Below are positions 471-21,193 of a stretch of 64,000 bases of DNA, piece after piece. How positions within the stretch are numbered: position 1 is the first letter of the stretch; every line of letters begins with the position of its first letter. Location of the stretch: NCBI RefSeq assembly GCF_963921235.1, contig NC_086120.1, positions 186,001 through 250,000 of the forward strand, read 5' to 3'. The notes under the pieces were generated by a model. That model was not told the origin of the DNA and did not search any database. It worked only from the letters and a program-made list of their open reading frames with translations. This stretch comes from Mobula hypostoma (taxonomy: Eukaryota). Position numbers and translations under genes: made by a program.

Positions 471-855
471 CTTTAGATCACCGACTGTGACCACAACAAA
501 GGGGGCCGTTCTTCTGTGGTGGAATTATCAACCCAGGTGAGGGTCGGACACACGAATAACTCCCCACCGGTCACACCCTTTTCACACTGCGAGAGCCACT
601 GATCGATCCACATGATCGATCCTCCAAAACCCACCTTTTCTGTGGGCACAACAAAGCTCATTCAGTGTCCAAAACCATGTGCCTGTAGGTCGAACAGCTG
701 ACCTATTTATCTCACCGTGCTGAACACCAGCTGTCCATCAAGTAGCTCCTCCCTTCTCTCTGTGTAAGAACTTAGAAGCTGCCAGTGTCCATGCAGAAGT
801 GTAAACATGCTGCAGAGAAACCATAACGTTATCTCAAAGCAGTCTTCACCTCTCT

Positions 856-2490: not shown

Positions 2491-2492
2491 CT

Positions 2493-3810
2493 ACAAGGCA
2501 TAGGCACAGAGTTAGGTCATTTGGCCCATCGAGTCTGCTCCACTATTCCATCATGGCTGATTTATTATTCCTCTCAACCACATTCTCCTGTCTTCTCCCC
2601 ATAAACTTGAACACCCTTACTAATCAAAAACCTATCAAGCTCCGCTTTAAAAAAAATTCAATAATTTGGTCTCCACAGCAATCCATGGCAATGAATTCCA
2701 CAGATTCACTACCAGCCAATTAAAGAAATTCCTCATCTCTGTTCTAAATGGATGTTTTTCTATTCTAAGGGCGTGCCCTCTGGTGCTCAACTCCCCAAAT
2801 GCAAGAAAAATCCTCTCCACATCCACTTTATCTAGGCCTTCCAATATTCAATAGGTTTCAGAGAGCCTCTCATTCTTCTAAACTCCAGTGAATATAGGCC
2901 TGGAGTCATCAAACACTCCTCGTATGTTAACCCTTCCATGCTGAATCATTCTCATGTACCTCCTCTGGACACCATCCAAAGCCAGCAAATCTTTTCCTGC
3001 TAAGGAACCCAAAACTACTAACAACACTCCTAACGCAGTATGACAAATGCCTAATAAAGCCTCAACATGACACCATCGCGAAATGAATGCTAATACTGCA
3101 TTTGCCTTCCAATTCAAAAAGAATCTTGCAGGATTCCCAAATTTCTTTGCACCTCTAATTTTTGAATTTTTCGCCTCTAATTTTCTGCACCTCTGATTTT
3201 AGAAAATAGCCCACATGGTTAATCTTTCCACTAAACTGCATAAACGCATATATATATATATTCCATCTGCCACTTGAATTCTCCCAATCTGTCAAAGTCC
3301 TTTTGCAGCCCCCCTGCTTCATCAACACTACTGCCCCTCCTTCGTACTTCATACTTTGACAGTTCTTCACAAATATGGACACAAAGCCATCAATTAAGTC
3401 ATCCAAATCATTTGTATGTAATATGAAAAGAAACAGTACCAACACCAACCCCTGTAGAACATCACTGGCAGCCAACCAGAAAAGGCCCCCTTTATTCACA
3501 CTCTTGCCAGTCAATCTTCTATCCAAGCAATATACAAAATGCTAGAGGAACTCCAGCATTTTGCGTGTGATGCTTGGATTTCCAGTATCTGTAGATTTTC
3601 TCTTGTTTGTGAATGAATCTTCTGTCCATTCTATTATCTTTCCTGTAATACCACATGCTTTTAACCTTGTTCAACAGCTTCACGTGCAGCGCCTTATCAA
3701 AAGCCTCAGTAAATCCAAGTAAACAACATCCACTGACTCTCCTTTGTCCACTCTGCCTATTATTTCCTCAAAGAATTCTAACAGATTTATCAAGCAAGAT
3801 TTTCCCTCAA
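2493..3810 (-). mobile_element. CR1-type LINE 3' portion, decayed
   Basis: GLDKVDVERIF...TRGHALRI...VVNLWNSLP; CR1 3' UTR near 2493-2650. Confidence 0.8.
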
Positions 3811-4902
3811 GACCACCAGGATTTTCCCACCAGATGGCATGCATTTGAGGTAAGAGGGGATAAGTTCAAAGAAGATGTGAGGGGCAAGTTGGGCAAGTGT
3901 TTTTTTTTAATTTTTTTTTACACACACAGTGAGTGGTGGGTACCTGGAATGCACTACCTAGGGTGGTGAGACTTTTACCAGACATTTAGATAGGCACATG
4001 AATGTGAAGAATATGGGCATTATGGAGGCAGAAGGCCAATTTAGTTGGCTATTTAATAACTAATTTAATTGGTTTGGCACAACATTGTAGGTCGAAAGGC
4101 TTGTTCCTGAGCTGTACTGTTCTATGTTCTACATTGCTACTGCTTTTCTCTTGTACTACCTCAAAGTATTTATGTTTTGAAATCATCTGTATGAATAGCA
4201 TGCAAACCTATGCTTTTCACAGTACCTCAGTACATGTGACAATAATAAATCAATACTAATATCAACTGGATCATGCCAACTATGGTACCCACTACTGTGT
4301 TTAGCCTATTCCCTCTAAACTTCTATCCATGTAATCACCCAAAAGTATTTTAAACACTATTGTCACTGCCTCAACTGGGAGGTGCGCAAATGCATAGCAA
4401 TATAAGGAAACCTTACTCTTTAGGAAGTTGCAATGGAGAACTATTGCACCAATACCCTCTTATAATCAAAATCTGCCAATGCACCAACTATTTTATCCTC
4501 CCTAGGACAGGATGAAGAATACATGATTGGTATACCAGTGTTGCAGAAAGATAAAGTGCTTCTTCTGAATTCCTATAGGTCACAGGTACAGGTCTTCTGA
4601 CAATGCATGCCCTTATTTAAATCAAGTTACCCTGAAACACATTGCTGTGTACCTGCCAACCTTCTATATGTACAACTCATGCACTTTTTAATATGGCTTC
4701 CAATCAGCACTTCAGTATTAAATCTTCAACAATTGCAAACATTTTCAAATTATGGAAAATACCATGTGATAAGAAATGCATTTTAAATTAAAAGGGGAAA
4801 AAGAGCTCACAGCAAACAGGGGGAGGAACAGTTCTTGCTGACCTTTCATGTCTTGTGGTAATTTCTACGAACAGCCCATTCTAATTGATGACAATACTGT
4901 AC

Positions 4903-5246
4903 CTAGAGGTTCCTGATGGTTGGTCTGGTCAATGTCACAGGTAATGACCTCATCAATTTCTGAATTGCTGCTGGAGCCTCCATCACTAGAGCTGCCAATC
5001 CACTGTGGAGTGCATTTGCTGTGGATCATAACCTCCCTCGACCTGCGCATTCGCTGCATCTGTTCTTTCTGTTGCTGGGTCCTCTGACACTTCTTCAAGC
5101 GAAGGAGCTTTCGAGAGGATGAGCTAACTGCCTTAATATTGAACTTGCCGGTTTTGACATTTTGGGTCCCAGAAGATGAGGCAATCCCAGCCACGTTTTC
5201 CTGATGTTCTTCTCTAATCCTCGCCGATGGGCTACCATCTGGGAGC
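4903..5246 (-). CDS. Arkadia-family protein, second coding exon; gene probably continues left of the window
   Basis: Acceptor tgatctttttcag|G is phase-2 compatible with the previous exon (AG+G = Arg). QRTQQQKEQMQRMRRSREV resembles RNF111 QRTQKQKERILMQRKKREV, followed by a Ser/acidic tract and NHQ. Donor CTAG|GTACAG (phase 1, inside a Gly codon). Confidence 0.78.
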
Positions 5247-5886
5247 CTGAAAAAGATCAAATAATTTCATATAATTATCCAAATTAGACAAAATTGCATA
5301 AAAAGAGCCAAAGACAAAATCACCCATAAAACCATGATGGCTTTTGGGTTCAATATTTCCAGGGAATAGGGTTTTTTTAGAATGGTACTTACATAATGAA
5401 AAAGGCTTAATTAATAATCTGGCAGTTTAGGAGCAATTATCAAACAGTGACATGATGATGTTGTGCACTTGGATGACTCAGGGGCAGGAATAGCTGCTCA
5501 GTGTACCAGGCTTTAGATGTTTCAAAAAGGACAGGGAGGGAGGCAAAAAAGGTGGGGGCGTGGCAATGTTAATCAGGGATGGTGTCATGACTGTAGAAAG
5601 GGAGAAAGTCATGGAGGGATTATCTACTGAGTAGTGTGGGTGGAAGTCAAAACAGGAAGGAGGCAATAACTCCGCTGGGTGTTTTTTATAGAACCCCCCC
5701 CCCCCCCCAAATAGTAACAGAGACATCAAGCAGCAGATAGGGAGGTAGATTCTGGAATGACGCAACAATAATAGGTTTGTTGTGATGGGTGATTTTAACT
5801 TTTCTAACATTGACTGACATCTTCTTAGAGCAAGGGATGGAGTTTGTTGGATGTGGAAGATTTCCTTATGCAATATGTAGATAAGG

Positions 5887-6088
5887 AACACTCACAACAC
5901 GCTGGAGGAACTCAGCAGGTCGGGCATCATCTGTGGAAAAGATCGGTCGACGTTTCGGGCCGGAACCCTTTGTCAGTTCCGGCCCAAAACGTCAACCGAT
6001 CTTTTCCACGGACGCTGCCCGACTTGCTGAGATCCTCCAGCGTGTTGTGAGTGTTGCTTTGACCCCAGCATCTGCAGATTATTTTGTG
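5887..6088. mobile_element. 202-bp fold-back Penelope-like terminal insertion with degenerate hammerhead motif
   Basis: Inverted repeat 5887-6055 plus a 33-nt tail; perfect TSD ATGTAGATAAGG at 5875-5886 and 6089-6100. Confidence 0.82.
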
Positions 6089-7399
6089 ATGTAGATAAGG
6101 AGAGGCTGTACATGATCTGGTATTGGGAAATGAACCTGGACAGGTGTCAGATCTCTCAGTGGGAGAGCATTTTAGAGCTAGTGATCACAACTCTATCTCC
6201 TTTAGTGCTGGAGAGGGATATCAGCAAACATTTCATTGGAGTAGGGGGAAATAACATGATATTACGCAGGAACTTGGTTGCATAAATTGGGAACAGATAT
6301 TTTCAGGAAAATGCACAGTAGAAATGTGGCAAATCTTCAGGGAACTTTTGCATGGCATTCTGAAGCGGGGAAAGGACGGTAGGGTAAAGGAACCATGGTG
6401 TACAAAAGATGTAGAAAATCAAGTTAAAAAGAAAAGCTCACAAAAGGTTCAAGAAGCTAGGTACTGATAGAGTTCCAGAAAATTACAGGGTTGCCAGGAA
6501 GGAGCTTAAGAATGAAATTAGGAGAGCTGGAGGGGGCCATGAGGAGGCTTTGGCAAGCAGGATTAAGGAAAACCCCAAAGAATTCTACAAATATGTGAAG
6601 AGCAAAATGACGAGCCATGTGAGAATAGGAGCAATCAGGTGCAACAGTGGAAACGTGTGCATGGAATCTGAGGAGGAGCTGAGGTACTTAATGAATACTT
6701 TGCTTCAATATTCACTAGGGCAATTGTGGGGATGACTTAGTAGACTGAAGCACTTGAGCATATAGACATTAAGAAAAAGGATGTGCTAGAGCTTTTGAAA
6801 AGCATTGTCCAGACAAGATATACCCAGGCTACTGTAGGAAGTGAGGGAGGAGATTGCTGAGCCTCTGGCGATGATCTTTGCATCATCAATAGAAACAGGA
6901 GAAGTACCAGAGGATTGGAGGGTTCCAAATGCTGTTCCTTTGTTTAAGAAAGGGAGTAGAGATAACTCAGGAAATTATAGACCAGTGAGTCTTACTTCAG
7001 TAGTGGGCAAGTTGTTGGAGAAGATCCCGAGAAGCAGGATTTATGAGCATTTGAAGAAACATAACCTGATTAGGGATAGCCAGCATGGCTTCGTCAAGGG
7101 CAAGTCATGCCTAATGAACCTAATTGAATTCTCTGAGGATGTAACAAAACACATTGATGAAGGAGAGCAGTGGATGTAGTGCATATGGATTTCAGTAAGG
7201 CATTTGATAAGGCTCTGGGCCTATACTCGCTGAAAATTAGAAGGTTGGCGATGGAGGGGGGGGCGGGTGGGGAAGAATCTCATTGAAATCTATTGAATAC
7301 TGAATAGGCCATGAAGAGGATGTTTCCTATAGTGGAGGATTCTTGGACCACAAGGCACAGCCTCAGAATAAAAGAACATTCCTTTAGAATGGAGATGAG

Positions 7400-9085
7400 C
7401 TGTATCAACACAAGTTTAGCACATATAGAGGATGAATTAACCAATTGAAGAATTTTTTCCCATTTTTCAATCGGTATAATAATCTTAAATTCTCTTTCCC
7501 AATCAGCCTTAATTTTATTGGAAACATCAGGACATAAATTCATAATTATATTATATATAATTGCTACAACACTTTTCTGAGAGAGATTTAGATCTAAAAT
7601 TTTTTCCAAAGTATCCATTGGATCTGAGTGTGGAAAATTAGGAGAAACAGTAATTAAAAAGTTTCTAATCTGTAGATATCTAAAAAAGTGAGATCTGGGT
7701 AAGTTATATTTATTAGAAAGTCGATCAAAAGACATGAAACAATTATCCAAACATAAATCATGAAAACGTACTATACCTTTGGTTTTCCAATCAAAGTAAG
7801 CTTGATCCATAGTGGAAGGTTGAAAAAGGAAATTAGATATAATAGGACTTGCTAAAATAAATTGATTAAACCCAAAAAATCTTCGAAATTGAAACCATAT
7901 ACGTAAAGTATGCTTAACTATTGGATTATTCATTTGTTTATACAATTTAGAAGAAGTAAAAGGGAGCGAAGTTCCTAAAACCGAACCCAAAGAAAACCCT
8001 CGTAATGAATCATATTCAAGATTTACCCAATGTGGACTTAAAGATACATCCAAATCTCGTAACCAAAATTTTAAATATCGAATATTAATTACCCAATAAT
8101 AGAATCTAAAATTCGGGAGGGCGAGCCCCCCACTCCTTTTTAGATTTCTGTAAATAACTTTTACCTAACCTAGGATTTTTGTTCTGCCATATATATGAGG
8201 AAATTTTTGAATCAACATTATCAAAAAAAGTAGTGCACCGGGCTCATATGTCCAAAGATAAACTATCTTGTCATTATTCTTATATTAATCCAATATGTGA
8301 TAGATGTCACTCCGAGATAGCTTCTTTAACTCACATGTTTTGGTCATGTCCTTCGTTGGAAAAATATTGGAAAGATATTTTTGATATTATTTCAACAGTT
8401 TTGAATACAGACTTACAACCTCATCCAATTACTGCTATCTTTGGATTACCAATGATAGACTCAAATTATCTAACCTCTCCAGCACGCCGGATGATTGCAT
8501 TTCTTACTTTAATGGCTAGAAGATCCATTTTGCTGAATTGGAAAGAGATTAACCCTCCTACTGTATTTCATTGGTTTTCACAAACTATGTTGTGTTTGAA
8601 TTTGGAAAAAATTAGAAGTGTGGTTTATGACCCTTCCATTAAATTTGAAAAAACTTGGAGGCCATTCATACAGCATTTTCAAATGATGTAATTTGACCAT
8701 TTCCAAACTTATTTTATTTCTCTGTACTGTTGGTTGAGAGGAATGGAGTCGTCAACCCTAAGGTTTTCTTCTCTTCCATTTTTAAGTTGTTAGAATTGCC
8801 CAAGTCTTTTAGTTTAGTTGACGAATTCTATTTAATTTAGTTTTTTTTTGGGGTGGGGTTTGTTTTTTTTTCTAATTTTTTTTTCTTTTTCATGATTTTT
8901 CTCCAGTTTTTTTTTGTCCCGTATTATTCATTGTTATCCTACACGATTGGGAGTTTTATCAATTTATAATATTTGGTCTTACAATTACTCATTTTAATTA
9001 CAACAATGTATCTCCTACTATCTGTATTATTGCTATGTTATGTTTATATTTTATGAAACTAATAAAAAGATTGAAAAAGAAAGAA
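7400..9085 (+). mobile_element. 5'-truncated, 5'-inverted L1-clade LINE
   Basis: TSD AGAATGGAGATGAG at 7386-7399 and 9086-9099. Inverted ORF2 part 7400-~8226 (-). Sense part ~8227-9085 has the CCHC knuckle (CDRC..HMFWSC), AATAAA and a (GAAA)n tail. Confidence 0.9.
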
Positions 9086-9614
9086 AGAATGGAGATGAGA
9101 AGGCATCTCTTTAGCTAGAGGATGGTGAATCTGTAGAAATCACTGCCACAGCTATGAAGCCAAGTCATTGGGTATATTTAAAGCAGAGGTTTATAGGTTC
9201 TTGATAAATAAGGGTGTCGAAGGTTACAGGACAACGCAAGAGAGTGGGATTGAGAGGAATAATAAATCACATATGATGAAATGGCGGGGAAGACTTAATG
9301 GGCCAAATGGCCTTATTTTGCTCCTCTGTCTTATGGTCATTTTCAAGTTGGAATTCTGTAGTCAGTGTAATATTGTACAGACAGATACTAGACCCCAGCT
9401 ATTCCTATATTACAAATTTCATTGAGGGAACCCACCCAAATGAAAATGCAAATGAATGAAAATACACCCAAAATAAAATGCAGGTGATCCACATATTGAG
9501 ACCTCTTAGAAAACAGGCTGTATCACAACTTTATATTATGCAAAGGCACATCATCTGTGCATGGATGAAGTAACAAGAGTTGAAAAAATGACCTACTCCT
9601 TCCCACCCCACACA

Positions 9615-12400
9615 CTTTGAGACCACTGACCATTGTTCTATTAGTTTTAAATTAGTTATGGAAAGGGACAGATCTGGTCCAAATCAAAGTACTAAATAAG
9701 GGCAAGTCAAAGTACTAAATACTTCAAATAATACAAAGTACTATTAGACAGGAGCTTGCAGAAGGTGACAGAAGTAGGTTGTTTGCAGGCAAAGAGACAT
9801 CTGGCAAGTGGGAGGTTTTTAAAAAGTAAGGTAGAAAGTTCAATATCTGCATGTTCCTGTTAGAATGACAGACAAGGTTGGCAGTAGGGAACCCTGGATG
9901 AAGGGGAATATTAAGGTTCTGCTCAGGAGAAAGAAGGCATGGATCAGGTACAAGCAGCCAAGCTCAAGTGAATCCCTGGAGTACAGCAGATGTAGGAATA
10001 CACTCAAGAAGGAAATTAGGAGGTCTAAAACTACTCTCGATCCTCCAAATGAGGTCTCACCAGTGCTTTATAAAGCCCCAGCATTACACCTTTGTTTTTA
10101 TATTCTAGTTCTTTTGAAATCAATGCTAACTTTACCAAGACATTTGACAAGGCCCTGCATAGGAGGTTGGTCAAAAAGGTTCAGTTGCTTGGGATTCAAG
10201 GTGAGGTAGAAAATTGGATCAGACATTGGCTTTGAGAGAGAAGCTAGAGAGTGGGGGTAGATGGTTGTCTCTCTGACTGGATTTGGTGTTGTGTAATGAA
10301 CCAGATTTGATTAGGGAGGTAAGGTAAAAGAACCCCATTATAATAGAATTCTTCCTCAAGTTTGACAAGGAGAAGCTAAAGTCAGATATATCAGTATTAA
10401 GTGGAGTAAAGGGAATTACAGTGCATCACAGAAGAGCTGGCCAAAATTGACTGGAAGGGGACACTAGCGGGGATTTTGGCAGAGCAGCAATGGCTGAAGT
10501 TTCTGGAAGCAATTCAGAAGGCACAGGATAGATATAAGAACTTGAAAGACACGATGACACAACCATTGCTGATAAGGGAAGTCACAGCCAACACAATGTG
10601 ACTAAACACCTTGATGAAGGTAGAGCAGTAGATGTAGTGTATATGGATTTCAACAAGACATAGAAACATAGAAAATAGGTGCAGGAGTAGGCCATTCAGC
10701 CCTTCAAGCCTGCACCACCATTCAGTGTACAAGGTACCCCAGGCAAGGCTTATTGAGAAAGTAAGGTGACATGGGGTCCAAGGGGACATTGCTTTCTGGA
10801 TCCAGAACCGGCTTGCCTGCAGAAGGCAAAGCGTGGCTGTAGATGGGTCATATTCTGCATGGAGTTCAGTGACCAGTGGTGTGCCTCAGGAATCTGTTTT
10901 GGGACCCCTACTTTCCATGATTTATACAAATGACCTGGATGAGGAAGTGGAGGGATGGGCGAGTAAATTTACTGATGACACAAGGGTTGGGGGTGTTGTG
11001 GATAGTGTGGAGGGCTGTCAGAGTTTACAGCAGGACATTGAAAGGGTGCGATACTGGGCTGAGAAGTGGAAGATGCAGTTCAACCCAGATAAGTGTGAGG
11101 TGGTTCATTTTGGTAGGTCAAATATGATGGCAGAATATAGTATTAATGGTAAGACTCTTGGCAGTGTGGAGGATCAGAGGGATCTGAAAAAGTTTAAGGG
11201 AATGGGGGATTCTCAGATCCCTGTAAACAATGAATTAAGTACTGACTGTGTCTGTGACTGCAGTGCGTTTGAATAATGTCTCACAGCTGCTTTCTTTCGA
11301 GCAAGATAAGAGTTAAAGTTCGCCCAGATCCACATGTCTCTGGGCTTTTCACACCTTTTGATTTTGACAAAAAGCAGTACCTGATGTAAATTAGACAGAA
11401 CATTCCTTTCTTAATTAAAGCATAAATTTGACAGATGTTCTTATCTTTCTAATTAAGTTGTGGCTCCAGCAAACCAGGTAGGACATTCCTTTATTTAATT
11501 AAGGTGGCTGGAGTGTCTAACAAATTGATTGTACTTTTGTATCGGTGGCCTTATAACTTCTGACAATTCTGACATCAGGCAGTGAACTTGTAGAACCGCT
11601 GGGGAGATGAGAATGATTCTCTCCCTGATGTCAGGTCCAAGTTCACTCGCCAGCTGAGCCAAAGAAATAAACGGGCGAAGAGATATGTAACAATCTTTTT
11701 GTGCTGTCGTTATTTGATCCAGCAAAGTTACGTTTACAGATTTTGGGGTCCGAGTCCATAGGACACTCAAAGCTGCTGCGCAGGCTGACTCCATGGTTAA
11801 GAAGGCATATGGTGCATTGGCCTTCAATCACGGGATTGAGTTTAAGAGCTGAGAGGTAACGTTGCAACTATATAGGACCCTGGTCAGACCTCACTTGGAG
11901 TACTGTGCTCAGTTCAGGTCACTTCACTACAGGAAGGATGTGGAAACCTTAGAAAGGGTGCAGAGGAGATTTACAAGGATGTTGCCTGGATTGGGGAGCA
12001 TGCCTTATGAGAACAGGTTGAGTGAACTCGGCCTTTTCTCCTTGGAGTGACAGAGGATGAGAGGTGACCTGATAGAGGTGTATAAGATGATGAGAGGCAC
12101 TGATCATATGGATAATCAGAGGCTTTTTCCCAGGGCTGAGAGGGCACAGTTTTAAGGTGCTTGGAAGTAGGTACAGAGGAGGTGTCAGAGATAAGTTTTT
12201 TTACACAGAGAGTGGTCAGTGCGTGGAATGGGCTGCTGGCGACAGTGGAGGCGGATACAATAGGGTCTTTTAAGAGACTCCATGGAGCTTAGAAAAATAG
12301 AAGGCTATGGTAAACCCAGGTAATTTCTAAGGTAAGGACTTGTTCGGCACAGCTCTTTGGGCCAAAGGGCCTGTATTGTGCTGCAAGTTTTCTATGTTTC
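9615..12400 (+). mobile_element. Cluster of decayed CR1 LINE fragments
   Basis: SGVPQESVLGPLL..NDLD..FTDDT; [30 protein letters not shown]; tail TTTCTATGTTTCTA near 12390. Confidence 0.85.
11185..11738 (+). mobile_element. Solo LTR (554 bp) inserted in CR1
   Basis: TG...CA termini; 4-bp TSD GATC/GATT; CR1 sequence resumes on both sides; AATAAA at 11666-11671. Confidence 0.7.
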
Positions 12401-12939
12401 TATAAAAGCAAAAGATAGAATATATAATAGAGAAAAAAATTAATGGGAAGTTAGAGTATTGGGAACCTTTTAAACACTTACAAAAGACAACTAAAAAAGC
12501 AACAAGAAGCAAAAAAGATTAAATATGAAGGCAAGCAAGCCAATAATATAAATGAGGATACCAAAGAATGGCCTAATTCTGCTCCAATGTGTTATGCTCT
12601 AATCTACAAAATGAGTGGAAAATTATGAAAACTTCATTGCCTTCCGTCTGTAACCAACCACTGCAATTTCGCTCACCAAGTTACAACAGACAATGTGTGT
12701 TCCAGTAGAAAGAACTCTCAAACGCTGTCATAAATGTGCTTGGAAGTAGCCTACAAGTGTCACAATGGTTATGGTGCCAATCTAGCATGGCCACAACTTA
12801 TTAACCCTACTGTAGTCTATGCATCTTTGGAATATCAGAGGAAACTCGTGGTCACAACAGAACATTCAAATTCCTTACTGACAATGATGGGAATTAACCC
12901 TGATTGTTCATCAGCAAACTTATTCCTCTTATTTACAGA

Positions 12940-13180
12940 TATTAGGTCATTTCAGCCCTATGAGCCACAGCATCCAACAACCCCCAATTTAACTCTGGCC
13001 GAATCAAAACCTAACTAACAATCACGAATTAGCCTAATAACCTGTACATCTTTGGACTGAGGAAGGAAAGCAGAGCACCTGGAGAAAACCCATACATTCC
13101 ACTTTGAGAACATACAAAACTCCTTACAGAGGATGCTGGGATTGAACTCCTGCTGTAATAGTGTCATGCCGTGGTGTCCT
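12940..13180 (-). mobile_element. V-SINE/HE1-like tRNA-derived SINE remnant
   Basis: Reverse-complement V-domain-like tract (TTTGGACTGAGGAAGGAAAGCAGAGCACCTGGAGAAAACCCA on +). Confidence 0.55.
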
Positions 13181-14276
13181 TAGAAATATTACATTTAGTT
13201 ACCAAGAACAAGATGTAATCTCCAGATGTAGCTGAATCAGTGCTTTAAAGGTTTACCATGCCTTTCTTGAGTTGTTCCAATAACAATTACACCAAAGATC
13301 TATTTGCTGTTTCTTGGTAACTTTATAAACTTTCTCAACCAGTCCAGTCATTTCCAACAAAACATGTATCTACAGATCCATATACCACTGTTTCTGTTCC
13401 CAGACCTCTTTCAGAACTGCCCCTTATATTGTATTTTATTATTCTCCCCAGCAAAATGTAATGCTTCATATTTTTTTGTATTATTTTGCACTTTTCCAAG
13501 GCACAGAAACAACTAAGCGAAACTTGAAGTTCCACCTTCTCTGGATTGACTACTATTACCATCCTCACACACCCAGGCCTGTTCCCTTTTCTGCAGATTT
13601 TCTTGCAGTTATTTAGATGTTTTCTGTTCAGAGGACAGATGAAAAATAATTGTTCAAAGTATCCACATTTAATCCTGTCTTTGTCACATCTCAAATATTT
13701 TTAAATATATGACTTCAACCTCCTTCTTCCTTTACTTACCTTTAGAAGTTTTATTACCTGCCTCAACATGTCAGGATAGCTTAATCTCAATATATTTTCT
13801 CCCTTATTTTTACTTAACTTTCTTCTGGCTTCGAATGCATCTGCCTTCCAGTCTGTTACCAACCTCTACAACATTGCAATTTTCTTCAACTTGATACTGT
13901 ACTGACGACTCAGTCCATGTCCACTACCTTGGGCCATAAGGCACACATTTATACTGCATCAGTTTGATCAAATTCTATTCTGGTGGACAATACTGTGTAC
14001 AAATACTTTACTGGAATTTTCATAATGTGACTTTACAAAAATATAGTACAAGCATCAATATCGAATCCCTCAATTTAGAACCTACAGCACATATGGGGAG
14101 ACACATTCACTAACCCTATTATGTGCCTGAGTAACTATTAGAATGGCGCACACGGGTTATGTACACACTACTCAAGCTAAAAAGGTTAATGACTGCAGTA
14201 TTATTTAAGAATTGCTTTTTTACGACTTCAAACCCGAATGTTCAGATTTTGAGTTTGTTATGCTTGTTATTCCTAC

Positions 14277-14677
14277 CTGTTAGCTCCCATCCACATCATC
14301 ATTCTCCCTTCATTCTTCTCTGATACAAGTTCGTCAGATTCAGCGAGGTTGGTACTGGAAGATGGAGGTGTCTCGACGGCATTAGAAGAGTTATTGCTTG
14401 CGTAAATATAGCTCCGCACATAGTGGCGATCAGTTTGCAAAGCAAGTTTGAGTTCCTTTGAAAAGCTGGAATGCTCAGGGTTCAGACACTCCATCCACTG
14501 AACAGGCTCCTGCTCTTTCAGCTCTGAACTCAAAGGCACCTGGTTAATATCTTGAATAATGCCATTGAAAGGTGAAGGACAAGAACCATCAAAGCCTACA
14601 GATGGTGGTGTTCCCTTGAGTTCTTGCTCTGTGCTGGAAACAAGGGGATTCTCTGGCAATTTTGAGGTTGATTCCAT
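14277..14677 (-). CDS. Arkadia-family (RNF111/ARK2N N-terminal-like) protein, first coding exon (exon spans 14707..14277, ATG at 14677)
   Basis: Acceptor ctttacaccacag|G at 14707; strong Kozak ATAATGG; open for 401 nt; donor CAG|GTAGGA (phase 2). YASNNSSNAVETPPSSSTNLAESDELVS resembles ARK2N [27 protein letters not shown] and RNF111 LSSPSSSLHFGDSDTVTS (from memory). Confidence 0.78.
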
Positions 14678-14977
14678 TATCAAACAAGAAACCAATGTTA
14701 CGGAAACCTGTGGTGTAAAGTTTGTAAAGAAGAACTCCATAATACAAAAGCACTATAATGCAGACTTATTTAACCAGATCCTTCCCCATGCTACCTCCCA
14801 AAATTTTACATTAGCATCCAATTTTTTAACTTAAACCATCTTACTGCAGTGAAAAAGTAAAAGTGGCCTAATAATGTCTACACTGTTGACTTTTATACAA
14901 AACAACTAACAAATGTCATCAGGAAATTATTAAGAAAAATAATGTTAGACTATTAAACAAGGCCATTCTTATCTCAA

Positions 14978-17288
14978 ACAAAAGAAAATCTTCAGATGCT
15001 GGATATCCAAGCAACACACACAAAATGTTGGATGAACTCAGCAGGCCAGGCAGCAAATTCAGAAAAAAGTACGGTCGACATTTTGGGTCAAGACCCTTCG
15101 GCAGGACTGGAGAAAAAAAAGATGAGTAAATATAAAAGGTGGAGGAGGGGAGAGAGAAACACAAGGTGATAGAAGAAACCGGGAGAGGGACGGATGAAGT
15201 AAAGAGTTGGGAAGTTGATCAGTAAAAGGCGGGAGAAGGAAAAGGAGAGAACAGGCCATGGAAAAAGAAAAAAGGGGGAGGAGCACCAGGAGTCGATGGG
15301 CAAGCAAGGAGATAAGGTGAGAGAGGTAAAAGGATAAGAGGAATGGTGAAGGGGGTGGGGCATTACCGGAAGTTTGAGAAATGCGCACTAATCCTAACCT
15401 CACCATCAAACCCGCAGATGGGGGGGGAAGGCTGTAGTAATCAGCTTGTTCCTGCCCAACTGAACTCATATCTCTCATACCTGCATACCTCAACTCTGTC
15501 TTATCCACCCCCCACCCCCCAAGTTCAGTCCCTTACTACCTACACCCATGACACTTCACACGCTCTGGATCTTTTCAATGATTTCAAGTTCACTGGCCCT
15601 CATCATCTTATTTTCACTATGATATCCAGTCCCCATATACCTCCATCCCCCACCAGGAAGGACTCAAAGCACTCCGTTTCTTTCCAACACCAGACCCAAC
15701 CAGTTCCCCTCCACCGCCAATATCCTCCATCCAGCAGAACTTGTCCTCACACTTAATAATTTCTCCTTTCGTTCCTTCCACTTCCTTCAAACAAAAGGTG
15801 TAGCCACAGGCACTCGCATGGGTCCCAGTTATGCCTGCCTTTTTGCCAGCTATGTGGAACAGCCTACACAGGTGTCCGTCCCCCATTTTCCTATGCTACA
15901 TTGATGACTGCATTGGTGCTGTTTCCTGCACCCATGCCGAGCTGGTCGACTTCATCAACTTTGCCTCCAACTTCCACCCTGCCCTCAAATTTAAAGGGCC
16001 CACAACCAACACCTCCCCCCCACCGCTCAATTTCGTTGTCTATCTCTGGAGGCAACTTATCTACTAATGTCTATTATAAACCCACGGACTCTCACAGCTA
16101 CCTGGAATATACCTCTTCTCACCCTGTTACTGAAAAAAACACCACCCCCTTCTCTCAATTCTTCCATCTCTGCCAAATCTGCTCTCAGAATGAGGCTTTT
16201 CATTCTAGAATGAAGGAGATGTCCTTTTTCAAAGAAAGGGGCTTCCCCTCTTCCACCATCTACACAGCCCCTCAATCGCATCTCTTCCATTTTTCGCATA
16301 TCTGCTCTTACCCCATCCTCCTGCCACACTACCAGGGATAGGGTTCCTCGTTCTCGTCTACCCCCACCAGCCTCCATGTCCAGCACATAATTATCCAGAA
16401 CTTCCGCCATCTCCAACAGGATCCCACCACCGAGCACATCTTTCCCTCCCCCCACACTTTCTGCTTTCCACAGGGATCGCTCCCTACGCAACTCCTTTGT
16501 TCCTCCCCACTGATCTCCCTCCTGGCACTTATCCTTGCAAACGGATCCTACCCTATACCTCCTCCCTCACTACCATTCAGGGCCCAAAGTCATTCCAGGT
16601 GAGGCGACACTCCACCTGTGAGTCTCTTGGGGACATATACTGTGTCCGATGCTCCCGGTGTGACCTCCTGCATATCGGTGAGACCTGACGTAAATTGGGA
16701 GACTGTTTCACTGAGTGCCTACGCATTGTCTGCCAGAAGAAGCGGGGATCTCCCAATGCCCACCCATTTCAATTCCACTTTCCATTCCCATTCCGATATG
16801 TCAATTCATGGCCTCCTCTACTGTAGCGATGAGACCACACTCAGGTTGGAACAACACCTTTATTCCACCTGGGTAGCCTCCAACCTGATGGCATGAACAT
16901 CAATTTCTCAAACCTCCAGCAATACCCCCCACCCCTCCCTTCACCATTCCCTTTCCCCTCTCTCACCTCATCTCCTTGCCTGCCAATCACCTCCCTCTGG
17001 TGCTCCTCCCCTTTACTTTTTTGCAATCCTTCTGTTTTCTCCTATTGGGCGACTCCTTCTCCAGCCCTGTATCTCTTTCACAATCAACTTCCCAGCTCTT
17101 TATTTCACCCCTCCCCCTCCCAGCTTCACCTATCACCTTGTGTTGTTCCCCCCCCCCGCACCTTTTATATCTACTCCTCAGCTTTTTTCTCCACTCCTGC
17201 CAAAGGGTCTCAGCCCGAAACTTGGACTGTACTTTTTTCCATAGATGCTGCCTGGCCTGCTGAGTTCCTGCAGCATTTTGTGTGTGTT
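14978..17288 (+). mobile_element. Penelope-like retroelement (RT + GIY-YIG) with inverted terminal pLTRs
   Basis: RT motif YIDDCIG, NFHPALKF, thumb YYKPTDSHSYLEYTSSHP, endonuclease IYCVRCSRCDLLHIGET. 14978-15385 is an inverted copy of the right end. TSD GCCATTCTTATYTCAA at 14962-14977 and 17289-17304. Confidence 0.88.
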
Positions 17289-17695
17289 GCCATTCTTATT
17301 TCAATATAATATAGGAATTGATATACACCTGGGCTATAAGGAAAAAACAGTTACAGCTTTAAAAAATTTACAGCTCATTTTTAAATCCGGATACCAGGTG
17401 TCATTGCAACTGTGGTACTTAAGTCAGTGATTCAGAGGGATGATCAACAGGAAAAATACCCATGATAAACTGTATCTGAGGCACAGCAGGATCAAGACTT
17501 TGGCCTATCGTATCTGTGGCAGCCATGACACTAATCTAAATGACCACCCACCCCCCATCTTCCTGTGCAACGCCCATATCCTTTCATTCTCCAAAAGTGG
17601 GATTAACTTATCCTGTTACAGGTCTCGATTCAAAATGTTGTTCATCCATTCCTGTCCATAGATGCTGCCTGACCTGCTGAGTTCCTCTAGCTTTC

Positions 17696-18676
17696 AAGCA
17701 ACACACACAAAATGCTGGTGGAACACAGCAGGCCAGGCAGCATCTATTGGAAGAAGTACAGTTGATGTTTCGGGTCCAGACCCTTCGTCAGGACTAACTG
17801 AAAAAAGAGATAGTAAGAGATTTGAAAGTGGGATGGGGAGGGGGAGACCCGGAATGATAGGAGAAGACAGGAGGGGGAGGGATGAAGCCAAGAGCTGAGA
17901 AGTTGATTGGCAAAAGTGATACAAGGCTAGAGAAGGGCATCATGGGACGCAAGGCCTTGGAAGAAAGAAACATAGAAAATAGGTGCAGGAGTAGGCCATT
18001 CAGCCCTTCGAGCCTGCACCACCATTCAGTATGATCATAGCTGATTATCCAACTCAGAACCCTGTACCAGCCTTCCCTCCATACCCCTGATCCCTTTAGC
18101 CACAAGGGCCATATCTAACTCCCTCTTAAATATAGCCAATGAACTGGCCTCAACTGTTTCCTGTGACAGAGAATTCCACAGATTCACCACTCTCTGTGTG
18201 AAGTTTTTCCTAATCTCTGTCCTAAAGGGCTTCCCCTTTATCATCAAATTGTGACCCCTCGTTCTGGACTTCCCCAACATCGGGAACAATCTTCCTGCAT
18301 CTAGCCTGTCCAATCCCTTTAGGATATTATACAATTCAATAAGATCCCCCCTCAATCTTCTAAATTCCAACGAGTATAAGCCTAGTTGATCCAGTCTTTC
18401 ATCATATGAAAGTCCTGCCATCCCAGGAATCAATCTGGTGAACCTTCTTTGTACTCCCTCTATGGCAGGGGGAGAAAGGGAGCACCAGAGGAAGATGGAG
18501 AACAGGCAAGGAGTAATTGTGAGAGGGAAAGAGAGAAAAAAAGACAATAAAGTTAAAATAAATAAATAAATAATAGATTAGGGATGGGGTAAGGAGGTGC
18601 CTGGCCTGCTGCGTTCCACCAGCATTTTGTGTGTGATGCTTGAATTTCCAGCATCTGCAGATTTTCTCGTGTTTGC
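17696..18676. mobile_element. Fold-back Penelope-like pLTR insertion into an older pLTR copy, itself interrupted by a young CR1 3' end (~17968-18466, -)
   Basis: TSD TTCCTCYAGCTTTC at 17682-17695 and 18677-18690; CR1 ORF AIEGVQRRFTRLIPG...VVNLWNSL. Confidence 0.8.
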
Positions 18677-19184
18677 TTCCTCCAGCTTTCTGTGTGTTGC
18701 TCCAGCTTTCAGCATCTGTAGTCTCATTACATTTTTTTTGTATGTTCGTGTGTCCACCTAAAATCTCTTAAATGCTCCTAACACTTCTACCACCTCCCTT
18801 TGGAGCACACTCCAGACCCCTACAAACCACTTCAAAGTGAAAAGAAAAGTATGCCTTGTGTTGTATAGTTGTAACATGATTTCCCAATTTATATAGTCAA
18901 TGACGTGATGAAGGAACGCATGCCAAACAACTTTTTCACAAAATTGTCTACCTGTATCACCGCTAACTGGAAACGATGCACCTTGTACACTTCCCAGGGC
19001 CCTGCTATTTACTGTGCAAGTTCTGCCCTGGTTTAAGTAACCAAACTTCAACATTTTTCCACTGTCAAGTCAAGTCTATTGGCATTTCGACCATAAGCTG
19101 CTGGGTACAGTACACAGTAAAAATGAAACAATGTTCCTCCAGCACCCTGGTAGAAGCCTTTTCCCACTTTCTCAGTAGATCTAC

Positions 19185-20012
19185 TGTAGATTTGGCTGTA
19201 AGCTTAGACATCCACCATCTACAATAGGATCCTACCACTGACCATATCTTTCCCACAAACCCTCCACCCCCCCGCCCCCCGCTTTCTACAGGGATCACTC
19301 TCCCTTGTCCAGTGATCATCCTCCAGGCAATTATCCATGCTAGCATGACAAATGCTACACTTGCCCTTACACCTCTTCTATCAGCATCACTCAAGGCTCC
19401 AAACAGTCCTAGGTGAGACAAAATTTCACCTGCACATCTGTGAGGGTCAGCTAATGCATCTGGTGCAGGCTCTTTTACATCAATGAAACCCAACACATTG
19501 GTGGAGCACTTTGTCAAGCACTCTTGCTCTGTCCACCTCAAAAGATGGAATTTCTCGATAGCCATCCATTTCAATTCAACTTCCTATTCCCTTCTGACAT
19601 GTCAGTCCATGGCTTCCTCTAATGGCACATAGAGCAGCAATACCTCACATTCTGTCTGAGTAGTTGCCAACCTGATCACATGACAGTGATTTCTCTAACT
19701 TCAGGTAATTCCTTCCCCTCCTCTTTTTCACTTCCCCATTCTGGTTCCTCTCTCACCCCTCCTCCTTCCCTTTCTCCTATCAGATTCCTCCTTGTTCAGT
19801 CCTTTACCTCTTCCAGCCCTTTTCCACCACCCACCTTCACCCTCACCTTTTTTCACCGAACTCCTGCCAGCTTCCCCTCACCCACCATCTTATTCTGCTT
19901 TCTGCCCTTCCTTTTCCAGTTCGAATTAAGGGTCTCCGACCCAAACGTCAACTATTTATTCCCCACCATAGATGTTGTCTGATTGGCTGAGTTCCTCCAG
20001 TATTTTGTGTAT
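19185..20012 (+). mobile_element. Older Penelope-like 3' fragment
   Basis: Degenerate match to 16390-17288 (GIY-YIG region, pyrimidine tract, pLTR end). Confidence 0.7.
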
Positions 20013-20624
20013 TGATCATAGACAAACAGCTCCACCATCCACCACACTAGCAATTTTGCTATCATCCACAAACTTACCAAGCACGTCGACTACATTCTCA
20101 TGGAAATCAATACACCTGATAAACAATAGTGGACCCTGTGGCATATTACCCACTGGTCACAGACATCCAATCTGAAATACAATCCTCCACCACCAATTTT
20201 ATATCGGCTTGTCTAGATCGACAACCCCAAAGAACAAAGTGGAATCTTCCCCCACATTTTGGTTAAGTTGTGGCGGAGAGCATCACTGGGGGAGGGATTC
20301 AGGATCGCTGGGCAGGAGGAGGTATCACGCCGTCTGCGTTTGTTGGGAGGGTGTTAAAATGGGATACACAATCACACCCTCCGCCGATCACCACCCACCC
20401 ACGCCGCAGTCACCGAGTCGGGGGGTGTGTTGAAGCTTAAGTCCCCACCGCCGACACTCACTCACTCACTTCCCGCAACAGCACTTCGTCCCGATGGGTC
20501 TCGTAGAGAGCCCCACCCACACTCCCACAACACTCCTGTCCCATGTCATCGAGAGGAAGAAAGGGGAAAAGGACTGGCACATCCGCGGCCCGAAACTACC
20601 CCAAACCCGCCAGCCGACACTCAC

Positions 20625-20680
20625 CGACCCACTGCCACAGCCCGGCCTCCTGTCGCTGTGAGATCACTTCCGGGGTCTTG
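20625..20680 (-). other. Putative non-coding exon 1 of the Arkadia-family gene
   Basis: Consensus minus-strand donor TCG|GTGAGT (plus ACTCAC 20619-20624) inside the CpG island, just downstream of the ETS-CRE motif on the minus strand. 5' end is a guess. Confidence 0.5.
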
Positions 20681-20685
20681 GCAGT

Positions 20686-20701
20686 GTGACGTCACTTCCG
20701 G
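20686..20701 (-). promoter_or_regulatory. Overlapping ETS-CRE composite motif CCGGAAGTGACGTCAC
   Basis: Plus strand GTGACGTCACTTCCGG; its reverse complement is the GABP/CREB composite element known from proximal housekeeping promoters. Confidence 0.7.
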
Positions 20702-21069
20702 GATCGCGGCGCCACAGAAATTCTCACATACACATACACACAAAGCAAGAGGCGTGTGTGCGCTTTCCTGGGGGAAAAGTCCTCCGGCTCGTCATCACTC
20801 GCCAGCGCACATCTGTCCCCGTGTCGTGCCGTGACTAGAAGTGGCAGGGCTCCACAATAAACCAGACGAACCTAAGCTCCGTTCTCCCGCCGGAAACTGT
20901 TGTCAATCCTGAATAGGAAAAGGACAGACCTGTCCGTCAAATGATTGTCGCTCCAACCTGCCAGTCGGTTGATGGTAGAGCGAATCACACTGTCCAATCA
21001 GCGTTGTAATTTTCCCTTTGCCGGCCAATGGGAATCTTGGAGGCAGGACTTCCGGCGGAGCTGGGCGCC

Positions 21070-21193
21070 ATGGCGAAGACCTACGATTACCTGTTTAAGC
21101 TACTGCTGATCGGAGATAGTGGCGTCGGCAAAACCTGCGTCCTTTTCCGCTTCTCCGAGGACGCCTTTAACACCACCTTCATCTCGACAATCG
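21070..21193 (+). CDS. RAB8A: RAB8A coding exon 1 (P-loop GDSGVGKT)
   Basis: Strong Kozak GCGCCATGG; 124 nt; donor G|GTATGG at 21194. Confidence 0.96.

What the first reader, a model, noticed from the sequence alone, without database searches (positions are those of the whole stretch)
4903..20680. Divergent Arkadia-family gene head-to-head with RAB8A: candidate retained third ohnologue
Seen: two minus-strand exons (14677-14277, 5246-4903) splice in phase into a ~248-aa Ser-rich N-terminus, with a strong Kozak and a likely non-coding exon 1 in the RAB8A CpG island. Knowledge (recalled human sequences): PPSSSTNLAESDELVS, QRTQQQKEQMQRMRRSREV, the Ser/acidic tract and NHQ..G align with the N-terminal region shared by RNF111/Arkadia (SPSSSLHFGDSDTVTS; QRTQKQKERILMQRKKREV; ENHQNNPAVPSG) and ARK2N/C18orf25. 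The phase-1 intron in that Gly appears to match the end of the first coding exon of RNF111. RAB8A plus CIB3 mark the segment orthologous to human 19p13, where I know of no Arkadia-family gene; RNF111, RAB8B and CIB2 are on 15q and ARK2N/ARK2C on 18q. Inference: a whole-genome-duplication paralogue kept in this lineage and lost in mammals, possibly an extra SUMO-targeted or TGF-beta/BMP-pathway ligase or CK2 adaptor.
Basis: partly seen in the sequence, partly recalled or inferred. Interest (0 to 1): 0.8.

Follow-up and report, generated by a model that had tools for sequence, protein, structure and literature searches.

The report
Third Arkadia-type ubiquitin ligase gene in rays
The two exons are the real, expressed start of a full-length Arkadia-type ubiquitin ligase gene that sits back-to-back with RAB8A in rays, sharks and chimaeras. 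It is separate from the two Arkadia loci known in mammals, and is probably an ancient duplicate that bony vertebrates lost.

Summary
Exons 14677-14277 and 5246-4903 (minus strand) splice in frame into 248 residues. These are 100% identical to residues 1-248 of the RefSeq model "arkadia-C-like" of Mobula hypostoma. Four RNA runs each hold one 3.0-3.4 kb contig that enters and leaves the window exactly at 14707 and 14277.

The full protein (838-1016 aa in orthologues) is colinear with RNF111. It has the Ser-rich tract, the QRTQKQKE basic motif, SIM1, the SOB motif, SIM2, a TIER motif (NRG changed to NHG) and an Arkadia-type RING-H2. Eleven of its 12 introns match RNF111 in order and phase.

It is not RNF111 and not ARK2N/ARK2C. 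Both exist separately in shark and ray genomes, and trees give three clades.

Orthologues turned up only in Chondrichthyes. The gene is head-to-head with a RAB8-type gene in Callorhinchus, Hemiscyllium and Hemitrygon, and with RAB8A in this window.

The phylogeny favours an origin before the cartilaginous/bony fish split. A stem-chondrichthyan copy of RNF111 is only marginally rejected (AU p 0.03-0.09). Synteny tips the balance towards a 2R ohnologue.

The gene is already machine-annotated, but no paper in the library searched describes it. CIB3 was not found. Function as a SUMO-targeted ligase is inferred, not shown.

The parts
20625..20887 (-). Putative non-coding exon 1. The donor side at 20625 is well defined. 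The 5' end is uncertain and is set here by the longest RNA-contig extension of 263 nt.
   Evidence: GTGAGT donor immediately after 20625 on the minus strand. In-frame stop 15 codons before the junction. RNA contigs carry 78-263 nt 5' of 14707, and no listed piece of those contigs maps in 14709-20149. Runs X3 and X4 hold all words of 20625-20790. Weak similarity to the upstream exon of Hemitrygon isoform X1 at 20647-20805. Overlap with the RAB8A 5' UTR is not excluded.
20655..20700 (.). Core of the shared divergent promoter region: CTTCCGG, TGACGTCA, CTTCCGG (ETS- and CRE-like sites) in the G+C-rich block.
   Evidence: Read directly. GC is 0.52 in 20001-22000. Promoter function is inferred.
14708..20624 (-). 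Intron 1, full of SINE/LINE copies.
   Evidence: Repeat families. Repeat-type RNA depth and no gene-specific contig pieces listed.
14277..14707 (-). First coding exon: 30 nt of 5' UTR plus codons 1-133 and two bases. ATG at 14677.
   Evidence: RNA contigs end exactly at both borders. 100% identical to P0029 residues 1-134.
5247..14276 (-). Intron 2. It is specific to this paralogue (phase 2, after codon 133) and absent from RNF111.
   Evidence: Intron maps of Pristis L001 and Callorhinchus L003 against Girardinichthys RNF111 L002.
4903..5246 (-). Second coding exon (codons 134-248 plus one base). It holds the QRTQQQKEQMQRMRRSREV basic motif and the Ser/acidic tract, and ends in phase 1.
   Evidence: Weak Pfam RNF111_N hit. 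hhalign E 5e-11. dN/dS 0.20 against Pristis.
1..4902 (-). Start of intron 3, with LINE reverse-transcriptase fragments. The remaining 11 coding exons (SIMs, TIER, RING) lie beyond the left edge of the window.
   Evidence: ORF list with RT-like ORFs. No further tblastn hit of P0029 or P0027 in the window. The gene spans 82-189 kb in relatives.
21070..21193 (+). RAB8A exon 1 ([23 protein letters not shown]...), divergent from the Arkadia-like gene.
   Evidence: 100% identical to the Rab exon 1 that lies 1245 bp from the orthologue's ATG in Callorhinchus.
48621..48710 (+). RAB8A last coding exon, the hypervariable tail [29 protein letters not shown] plus stop.
   Evidence: 24 of 29 residues identical to the tail of human RAB8A, chain 5szi_A.

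Best explanation
The finding is the 5' end (a putative non-coding exon plus the first two coding exons) of an intact, transcribed, multi-exon gene for a third Arkadia-family RING-H2 ubiquitin ligase. The window comes from Mobula hypostoma or a near twin. The gene occurs across cartilaginous fishes (rays, sawfish, electric ray, sharks, chimaera). It is distinct from RNF111 and from the ARK2N/ARK2C locus.

It shares a divergent promoter region with RAB8A. It most likely descends from the early vertebrate genome duplications: RNF111 lies on the RAB8B/TPM1 paralogon, ARK2N/ARK2C on the 18q-type paralogon, and this gene on the RAB8A/19p13-type paralogon. It was then lost in the bony-vertebrate lineage.

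By inference from conserved modules, the protein is a nuclear SUMO-targeted ubiquitin ligase. SIM1, the SUMO1-binding SOB motif and SIM2 would bind SUMO chains. The TIER segment and the Arkadia-type RING-H2 would recruit an E2~ubiquitin and ubiquitylate bound substrates, possibly SKI/SnoN/SMAD7-type repressors of TGF-beta/BMP signalling. The divergent N-terminus and a clade-specific QQQQQCSVYQ repeat suggest partners of its own.

Shown here: gene structure, expression, family membership, distinctness, conserved synteny and purifying selection. Inferred: WGD origin, loss in bony vertebrates and biochemical function.
For: - Splice-exact RNA contigs in four runs, and identity to the RefSeq model P0029.
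- Orthologues with 44-94% identity in the N-terminal 248 aa from Callorhinchus to Hemitrygon.
- The full-length search gives chondrichthyan hits at 980-2213 bits, then a gap to all RNF111 at 217 bits or less, including shark RNF111.
- Colinear alignment with invariant SIM1, SOB and SIM2 columns and a near-identical RING. The roles of these motifs in human Arkadia are described in PMC6695498.
- The C-terminus matches solved ARK2C and Arkadia RING structures at E 6e-40 and 2e-31.
- Eleven of 12 introns are shared with RNF111 in order and phase, six at the identical alignment column. The gene is therefore a DNA-level duplicate, not a retrocopy.
- Trees give three clades: C-terminal NEW 100/100, ARK2C 99/97, RNF111 90/98; N-terminal NEW 100/99, RNF111 92/90; concatenated RNF111 99/98, NEW 100/100, ARK2 97/99.
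- Forcing NEW with chondrichthyan ARK2C is rejected (AU p 0.0105). Forcing NEW with chondrichthyan RNF111 costs 22.5 lnL units (p 0.058; bootstrap proportion (bp-RELL) of the unconstrained tree 0.94).
- NEW shares WLATSKKC with ARK2C, whereas every RNF111, including shark RNF111, has WL(I/T)TNKKC.
- Separate RNF111 and ARK2C genes on other chromosomes of the same or sister genomes.
- Head-to-head with a 207/220-aa Rab gene in Hemiscyllium (1.46 kb between CDS starts), Hemitrygon (232 bp) and Callorhinchus (1245 bp, exon 1 100% identical).
- The neighbour is RAB8A by its tail.
- dN/dS is 0.23 for the window exons against Pristis. The C-terminal 120 aa are 90% identical between ray and chimaera.
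Against: - Pfam RNF111_N never reaches its gathering score in this clade.
- AU tests do not cleanly reject a duplication of RNF111 on the chondrichthyan stem followed by fast divergence (p 0.094 C-terminal, 0.034 N-terminal, 0.058 concatenated). The clade sits on a very long stem (about 1 to 2.5 changes per site), so long-branch effects are possible.
- No cyclostome or invertebrate outgroup was available, so the trees are unrooted.
- Absence from bony vertebrates rests on protein collections only, not on tBLASTn of genomes.
- Linkage of RNF111 to RAB8B/TPM1 and the 15q/18q/19p paralogy are my own knowledge of the human map, not tested here.
- RNF111 proper was shown in sharks but not in Mobula itself.
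- NRG is changed to NHG.
- No biochemical data exist.
Confidence: 0.72

Rival explanations
1. The gene is a lineage-specific DNA duplicate of RNF111. It arose on the chondrichthyan stem, after the split from bony vertebrates and before the chimaera/elasmobranch split. It landed next to RAB8A, diverged very fast and was then frozen by selection.
For: Orthologues were found only in Chondrichthyes. The constraint NEW + chondrichthyan RNF111 is not rejected at 0.05 in the C-terminal and concatenated data (p 0.094 and 0.058). The clade has a very long stem branch but tiny internal branches. Its intron pattern is almost the same as RNF111's.
Against: All three ML trees keep RNF111, including shark RNF111, monophyletic without it (90/98, 92/90, 99/98). 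The N-terminal AU test gives p 0.034. The RING character ATSKK is shared with ARK2C, not RNF111. A chance insertion of a copy tens of kb long exactly at the promoter of RAB8A, the ohnologue of a gene linked to RNF111, would be a striking coincidence. The arrangement is already fixed in chimaera.
Confidence: 0.2
2. The gene is simply the RNF111 orthologue or the unsplit ARK2N-ARK2C orthologue of cartilaginous fishes, so there is no extra paralogue.
For: Automatic names vary: arkadia-A/B/C-like, Arkadia-like, ARK2N-like, RNF165-like. Its domain order equals that of RNF111.
Against: RNF111 proper (Pfam RNF111_N 338.8 bits) and this gene lie on different contigs of the same assemblies in Hemiscyllium ocellatum and Chiloscyllium plagiosum. 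ARK2C is present separately in Hemitrygon, Mobula birostris, Rhincodon, Mustelus, Scyliorhinus, Leucoraja and others. Forcing it with chondrichthyan ARK2C is rejected at p 0.0105.
Confidence: 0.03
3. The locus is a transcribed but decaying pseudogene or a mis-assembled gene model, so the open exons are a remnant.
For: Only two coding exons are visible in the window. The N-terminus is poorly conserved against RNF111.
Against: Full-length open models with an intact RING exist in at least 12 species. dN/dS is 0.23. The C-terminus is 90% identical across chimaera and rays. RNA contigs of 3.0-3.4 kb are spliced exactly at the exon borders.
Confidence: 0.02

Closest known systems
RNF111 / Arkadia (human 15q22; SUMO-targeted RING-H2 ligase that enhances TGF-beta/Nodal signalling)
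   Same: Same module order along the whole length: Ser-rich tract, QRTQKQKE basic motif, Ser/acidic tract, SIM1, SOB, SIM2, CC..C patch, TIER and RING-H2. The last 120 aa are 64-66% identical. Eleven of 12 introns match in order and phase.
   Different: - The N-terminal 250 aa are barely alignable (Pfam RNF111_N 15-26 bits against 339 bits).
- There is an extra phase-2 intron after codon 133.
- RNF111's His/Pro-rich segment and its intron are replaced by a QQQQQCSVYQ repeat.
- NRG is NHG, and the RING has ATSKK rather than (I/T)TNKK.
- It lies in a different chromosome region, next to RAB8A.
- It forms a separate clade.
ARK2C (RNF165) plus ARK2N (C18orf25), the tandem 'Arkadia2' locus on human 18q21 (PMC3627648)
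   Same: The C-terminus matches solved ARK2C RING structures best (5d0i, E 6e-40) and shares WLATSKKCPICRVDI. The N-terminal half shares the Ser-rich, basic and SIM/SOB modules with ARK2N.
   Different: It is one continuous gene and protein of about 840-1020 aa, not two genes. Only 60% of the last 120 aa are identical. ARK2C orthologues exist separately in the same species. Grouping it with chondrichthyan ARK2C is rejected.
RefSeq automatic models 'E3 ubiquitin-protein ligase arkadia-A/B/C-like' and 'Arkadia-like' of sharks, rays and Callorhinchus (for example XP_060702293, XP_042198761)
   Same: These are the same gene. The Mobula hypostoma model P0029 uses exactly the two exons seen here.
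   Different: The models carry best-hit names taken from Xenopus rnf111 copies. They make no statement of paralogy, and no paper on them was found in the library searched.

Membership tests
Arkadia family (RNF111 / ARK2N-ARK2C) | C-terminal Arkadia-type RING-H2 with all eight zinc ligands and the conserved Trp (..VDQWL..) | tested here: met
   Pfam zf-RING_2 scores 55.8 bits in P0029. The alignment is near-identical to RNF111 and ARK2C. PDB ARK2C E 6e-40, Arkadia 2kiz E 2e-31. This part is encoded outside the window. It is linked through the 100% identity of P0029 residues 1-248 with the window.
Arkadia family (RNF111 / ARK2N-ARK2C) | NRG-TIER segment just upstream of the RING | tested here: inconclusive
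   TIER is conserved (..NTIERCTFLHKYEKR..). NRG reads NHG in all members of the clade. The effect on substrate binding is unknown.
Arkadia family (RNF111 / ARK2N-ARK2C) | Clustered SUMO-binding motifs SIM1, SOB and SIM2 | tested here: met
   Invariant columns E253 D255 V256 V258 E260, D279-I284 V287 and E324-T329 across the new clade and RNF111. Motif definitions come from PMC6695498. SUMO binding itself was not tested.
Arkadia family (RNF111 / ARK2N-ARK2C) | Pfam RNF111_N (PF15303) at or above its gathering score of 27 bits | tested here: not met
   15 bits on window exon 2, and no hit on exon 1. 25.9 and 23.4 bits in two sharks, and none at E <= 0.01 in rays or chimaera. Homology is still supported by a profile-profile comparison, E 5e-11, probability 97%.
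Arkadia family (RNF111 / ARK2N-ARK2C) | Shared exon-intron structure | tested here: met
   Both genes give the phase series 1,2,1,1,0,1,2,0,0,0,2. Six introns lie at the identical alignment column and five within 15 columns in low-complexity regions. Each gene has one private intron.
RNF111 orthologue | Groups within gnathostome RNF111 and is the only RNF111-like gene of its genome | tested here: not met
   It falls outside the RNF111 clade in three trees. RNF111 proper is present on another contig in H. ocellatum and C. plagiosum.
ARK2C/ARK2N orthologue | Groups with chondrichthyan ARK2C/ARK2N | tested here: not met
   AU p 0.0105 against this grouping. Separate ARK2C genes exist in Hemitrygon and Mobula birostris.
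2R ohnologue of RNF111 and ARK2 | Lies in the paralogous chromosome block (RAB8A/19p13-type against RAB8B/15q22-type) | tested here: met
   It is divergent from RAB8A in the window (tail 24/29 identical to human RAB8A). It is divergent from a 207/220-aa Rab gene in shark, ray and chimaera. That RNF111 is linked to RAB8B/TPM1 and that 15q/18q/19p are paralogous is my own knowledge, not tested here.
2R ohnologue of RNF111 and ARK2 | Duplication node older than the chondrichthyan/osteichthyan split | tested here: inconclusive
   This is the ML topology in all data sets (bootstrap proportion, bp-RELL, 0.94). The alternative is only marginally rejected: p 0.094, 0.034 and 0.058.
2R ohnologue of RNF111 and ARK2 | Single pro-orthologue in invertebrate chordates; timing relative to cyclostomes | not tested
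SUMO-targeted ubiquitin ligase (STUbL) | Binds SUMO chains and ubiquitylates SUMOylated substrates | not testable with these tools
   Only the sequence motifs are conserved.

The most novel reading that the evidence does not exclude
Cartilaginous fishes keep a third full-length Arkadia ohnologue, lost in the ancestor of bony vertebrates. They have held it for over 400 million years in a bidirectional unit with RAB8A. Its RING/TIER and SUMO-binding modules are nearly frozen, while its N-terminus is re-invented and it has a lineage-specific, copy-number-variable QQQQQCSVYQ repeat. This would mean a SUMO-targeted ligase with substrates or regulation not represented in any model organism. It would also give an unsplit third reference point for working out how the ARK2N/ARK2C locus became two genes.
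Probability: 0.65. Interest if true: 0.55.

Novelty: new member of a known kind. Interest (0 to 1): 0.45.

Why it matters
The Arkadia family is studied as two loci: RNF111 for TGF-beta/Nodal signalling and ARK2C/ARK2N for BMP signalling and CK2/PKA-linked roles. A third, intact, slowly evolving member in sharks, rays and chimaeras changes that picture in three ways.

- The ancestral jawed vertebrate had at least three Arkadia genes.
- The new gene is a natural comparison for which modules are indispensable. SIM1, SOB, SIM2, TIER and the RING stay almost unchanged, while the RNF111_N region does not.
- It adds a clean example to the list of ohnologues kept only in cartilaginous fishes.

The tight divergent pairing with RAB8A over more than 400 million years also suggests shared regulation that could be tested. 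The gene is already present as an automatic RefSeq model, so the gain is in interpretation rather than gene discovery.

Tried and rejected
- Pfam on the separate exon peptides gave only a sub-threshold RNF111_N hit. The spliced peptide was not sent to Pfam, to avoid pasting letters. hhalign in a script was used instead.
- phmmer of exon 2 against 1.84 billion representatives found only two orthologue clusters and no RNF111 or ARK2N. The window part alone is therefore too divergent for single-sequence detection.
- Read laying could not span either long intron within 6000 bases.
- The treekit AU test on the 46-row concatenated matrix did not finish. A first direct IQ-TREE run with non-overlapping ARK2N and ARK2C rows timed out. 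The problem was solved with two chimeric ARK2 rows and fewer ARK2C rows under LG+F+G4. Constrained searches used -fast.
- The search for ARK2N returned only two usable sequences, P0315 and P0317.
- RAB8A exon 1 and tropomyosin motifs were not found in the 10 kb flanks of the Pristis locus L001.
- CIB3 was not found by an EF-hand pattern or an ORF scan of 49-64 kb.
- Earlier-findings look-ups returned nothing.
- Exact look-ups failed for isoforms P0029, P0016 and P0037.
- The retrogene idea is rejected because of the 13 coding exons. The pseudogene idea is rejected because of intact orthologues and dN/dS 0.23.

Full report
**Observation.**
On the minus strand, 14707-14277 and 5246-4903 are open and bounded by canonical sites. 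The first exon has an AG acceptor before 14707, its ATG at 14677 in the context gataATGg, and a GT donor after 14277. The second has an AG acceptor before 5246 and a GT donor after 4903. Joining them (phase 2 to phase 1) gives 248 residues, and the second exon ends in phase 1. The peptide is identical over all 248 residues to the start of P0029, the RefSeq model "E3 ubiquitin-protein ligase arkadia-C-like isoform X2" of Mobula hypostoma (838 aa). The window is therefore from that ray or a near twin, and the automatic annotation uses the same exons. No other coding exon of the gene lies in the window.

**Expression.**
Four RNA runs of organism A each hold a single contig of 2963-3400 nt. Each contig matches 14276/7-14707/8 without a mismatch and continues 78-263 nt on the 5' side and 2368-2704 nt on the 3' side. 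Word depth falls to zero at 14750-14949. Both exon borders are thus used as splice borders. None of the listed pieces of these contigs maps in 14709-20149.

- A GTGAGT donor ends it at 20625.
- Its frame has a stop 15 codons before the junction, which leaves 14677 as the start codon.
- Runs X3 and X4, whose contigs extend 258-263 nt upstream, hold every sampled word of 20625-20790.

The joints themselves were not seen, and overlap with the RAB8A 5' UTR cannot be excluded.

**What the gene is.**
Exon 2 alone finds only two clusters among 1.84 billion representatives. One is a 973-aa protein of Hemiscyllium ocellatum, annotated "arkadia-A-like". A full-length search gives a tight set of chondrichthyan proteins at 980-2213 bits. 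The set covers Scyliorhinus, Heterodontus, Carcharodon, Mustelus, Chiloscyllium, Stegostoma, Pristis, Narcine, Hemitrygon, Mobula and Callorhinchus. A sharp drop follows to every RNF111 at 217 bits or less, shark RNF111 included.

The proteins are colinear with RNF111 from end to end. Human residue numbers below are from PMC6695498:
- SSPSSSTNLAESDEL aligns with SSPSSSLHFGDSDT.
- KKCQRTQKQKEQMQR aligns with SQRTQKQKERILLQR.
- DEDDVLVVEP corresponds to SIM1 (residues 293-304 in human Arkadia).
- DSEVEIINV corresponds to the SUMO1-binding SOB motif (322-333).
- AEVVDLT corresponds to SIM2 (382-391).
- A TIER segment follows, with NRG changed to NHG, and then a RING-H2 almost identical to Arkadia's.

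The C-terminus matches the solved ARK2C and Arkadia RING structures at E 6e-40 and 2e-31.

The part encoded in the window is the most divergent. Pfam RNF111_N reaches only 15 bits on exon 2 and 23-26 bits in sharks, against a cut-off of 27 and 339 bits for shark RNF111. A profile-profile comparison still aligns residues 97-240 with 121-279 of RNF111's first coding exon at E 5e-11.

**Gene structure.**
I mapped the introns of the Pristis orthologue (L001, 13 coding exons over 82 kb) and of a teleost RNF111 (L002). Both give the phase series 1,2,1,1,0,1,2,0,0,0,2. Six introns lie at identical alignment columns and five within 15 columns in low-complexity stretches. The new gene has one private intron, phase 2 after codon 133, which is the 14277/5246 intron seen in the window. 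It is present in Callorhinchus too. RNF111 has one private intron, in a segment that the new gene replaces with a QQQQQCSVYQ repeat.

The split codon is Glu or Asp here and Gly in RNF111. The gene is a DNA-level duplicate, not a retrocopy.

**Not RNF111 and not ARK2.**
RNF111 proper and this gene sit on different contigs of the same assemblies. In H. ocellatum they are on 43.1 Mb and 57.1 Mb contigs. In C. plagiosum they are on 38.7 Mb and 45.4 Mb contigs. ARK2C exists separately in Hemitrygon, Mobula birostris, Rhincodon, Mustelus, Scyliorhinus and skates.

| Data set | New clade | RNF111 | ARK2 |
|---|---|---|---|
| C-terminal 200 columns | 100/100 | 90/98 | ARK2C 99/97 |
| N-terminal 381 columns, with two ARK2N | 100/99 | 92/90 | ARK2N 100/100 |
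| Concatenated | 100/100 | 99/98 | 97/99 |

Forcing the clade to join chondrichthyan ARK2C is rejected (AU p 0.0105). Forcing it to join chondrichthyan RNF111 costs 9-22 lnL units, with p 0.094, 0.034 and 0.058. The duplication is therefore most likely older than the split between cartilaginous and bony fishes. A stem-chondrichthyan duplicate that diverged quickly is not formally excluded, and no outgroup was available. One qualitative character points the same way: the RING reads WLATSKKC in the new clade and in ARK2C, but WL(I/T)TNKKC in all RNF111, including shark RNF111.

**Synteny.**
The neighbour on the plus strand starts at 21070 and ends near 48710. Its hypervariable tail matches that of human RAB8A at 24 of 29 residues.

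| Species | Size of the divergent Rab-family gene | Gap between the two coding starts |
|---|---|---|
| Hemiscyllium | 207 aa | 1.46 kb |
| Hemitrygon | 220 aa | 232 bp |
| Callorhinchus | 207 aa | 1245 bp |

In Callorhinchus the Rab exon 1 is 100% identical to the window's. The pairing therefore predates the chimaera/elasmobranch split.

From my own knowledge of the human map, not tested here:
- RNF111 lies on 15q22 with TPM1 and RAB8B.
- ARK2N/ARK2C lie on 18q21.
- RAB8A and TPM4 lie on 19p13.
- 15q/18q/19p form a classical paralogon, with TCF12/TCF4/TCF3 and PIAS1/PIAS2/PIAS4 as markers.

A third Arkadia gene beside RAB8A fits that pattern. A chance insertion at exactly this spot would be a coincidence.

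**Selection and function.**
dN/dS for the two window exons against Pristis is 0.23. The last 120 residues are 90% identical between ray and chimaera. I infer that the protein is a nuclear SUMO-targeted RING-H2 ligase of the Arkadia type. Whether it acts on SKI/SnoN/SMAD7-type substrates (PMC3627648) is open. NHG in place of NRG, the re-made N-terminus and the variable Q-rich repeat argue for some specialisation.

**Novelty.**
The gene is present in RefSeq and UniProt only as automatic models with inconsistent best-hit names. Three full-text searches found no paper describing a third Arkadia paralogue or linking Arkadia to cartilaginous fishes. Kelly et al. 2013 mention only two extra Arkadia-like pseudogenes (presumably in mouse). 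I rate it a new member of a known kind, of moderate interest.

**Not confirmed.**
- CIB3 in the window.
- The exact 5' end of exon 1.
- RNF111 proper in Mobula itself.
- Absence of the gene from bony-vertebrate and cyclostome genomes at the DNA level.

Noticed in passing
Outside the window: P0029 residues about 640-670; P0002, P0016 and P0028 about 700-800: A tandem decapeptide QQQQQCSVYQ lies just upstream of the TIER/RING module. It is specific to this paralogue. Rays have 2-3 copies; sharks and chimaera have 8-9. RNF111 has a His/Pro-rich segment with its own intron at this place.
   Followed up: partly
window 14950-18750: Intron 1 is packed with SINE/LINE copies in both orientations. They share a TGCCTGGCCTGCTG(A/C)GTTCC...CAGCATTTTGTGTG core. 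They attract RNA-contig word depths up to about 9e4, so this is a very abundant transcribed repeat family of this genome.
   Followed up: no
window 20655-20700: CTTCCGG, TGACGTCA and CTTCCGG (ETS-like and CRE-like sites) lie between the two divergent genes. This is typical of a bidirectional CpG-island promoter.
   Followed up: no
window 20647-20805 (minus strand) and Hemitrygon P0027 residues 1-30: Hemitrygon isoform X1 starts in an upstream exon only 232 bp from the Rab coding start. It reads through the VSVTLVSCLIM leader of the first coding exon. The window has the same leader, but an in-frame stop in the upstream exon.
   Followed up: partly
window 829-3526 (minus strand): ORFs with reverse-transcriptase-like motifs (..FINDLDEEVEGWVSEFADDAKV....HTNDLDD..) lie in intron 3. 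They are LINE fragments.
   Followed up: no
The region looks repeat-rich.
   Followed up: partly
Hemitrygon locus, 81909-83729: A 607-aa single-exon ORF without any Pfam hit is called inside an intron of the orthologous gene. It may be a transposon gene.
   Followed up: no
Callorhinchus L003 8630-8755 and 10001: In the chimaera, Rab exon 1 is 100% identical in protein to the window's RAB8A exon 1. It lies 1245 bp from the ATG of the Arkadia-like gene, on the opposite strand.
   Followed up: yes
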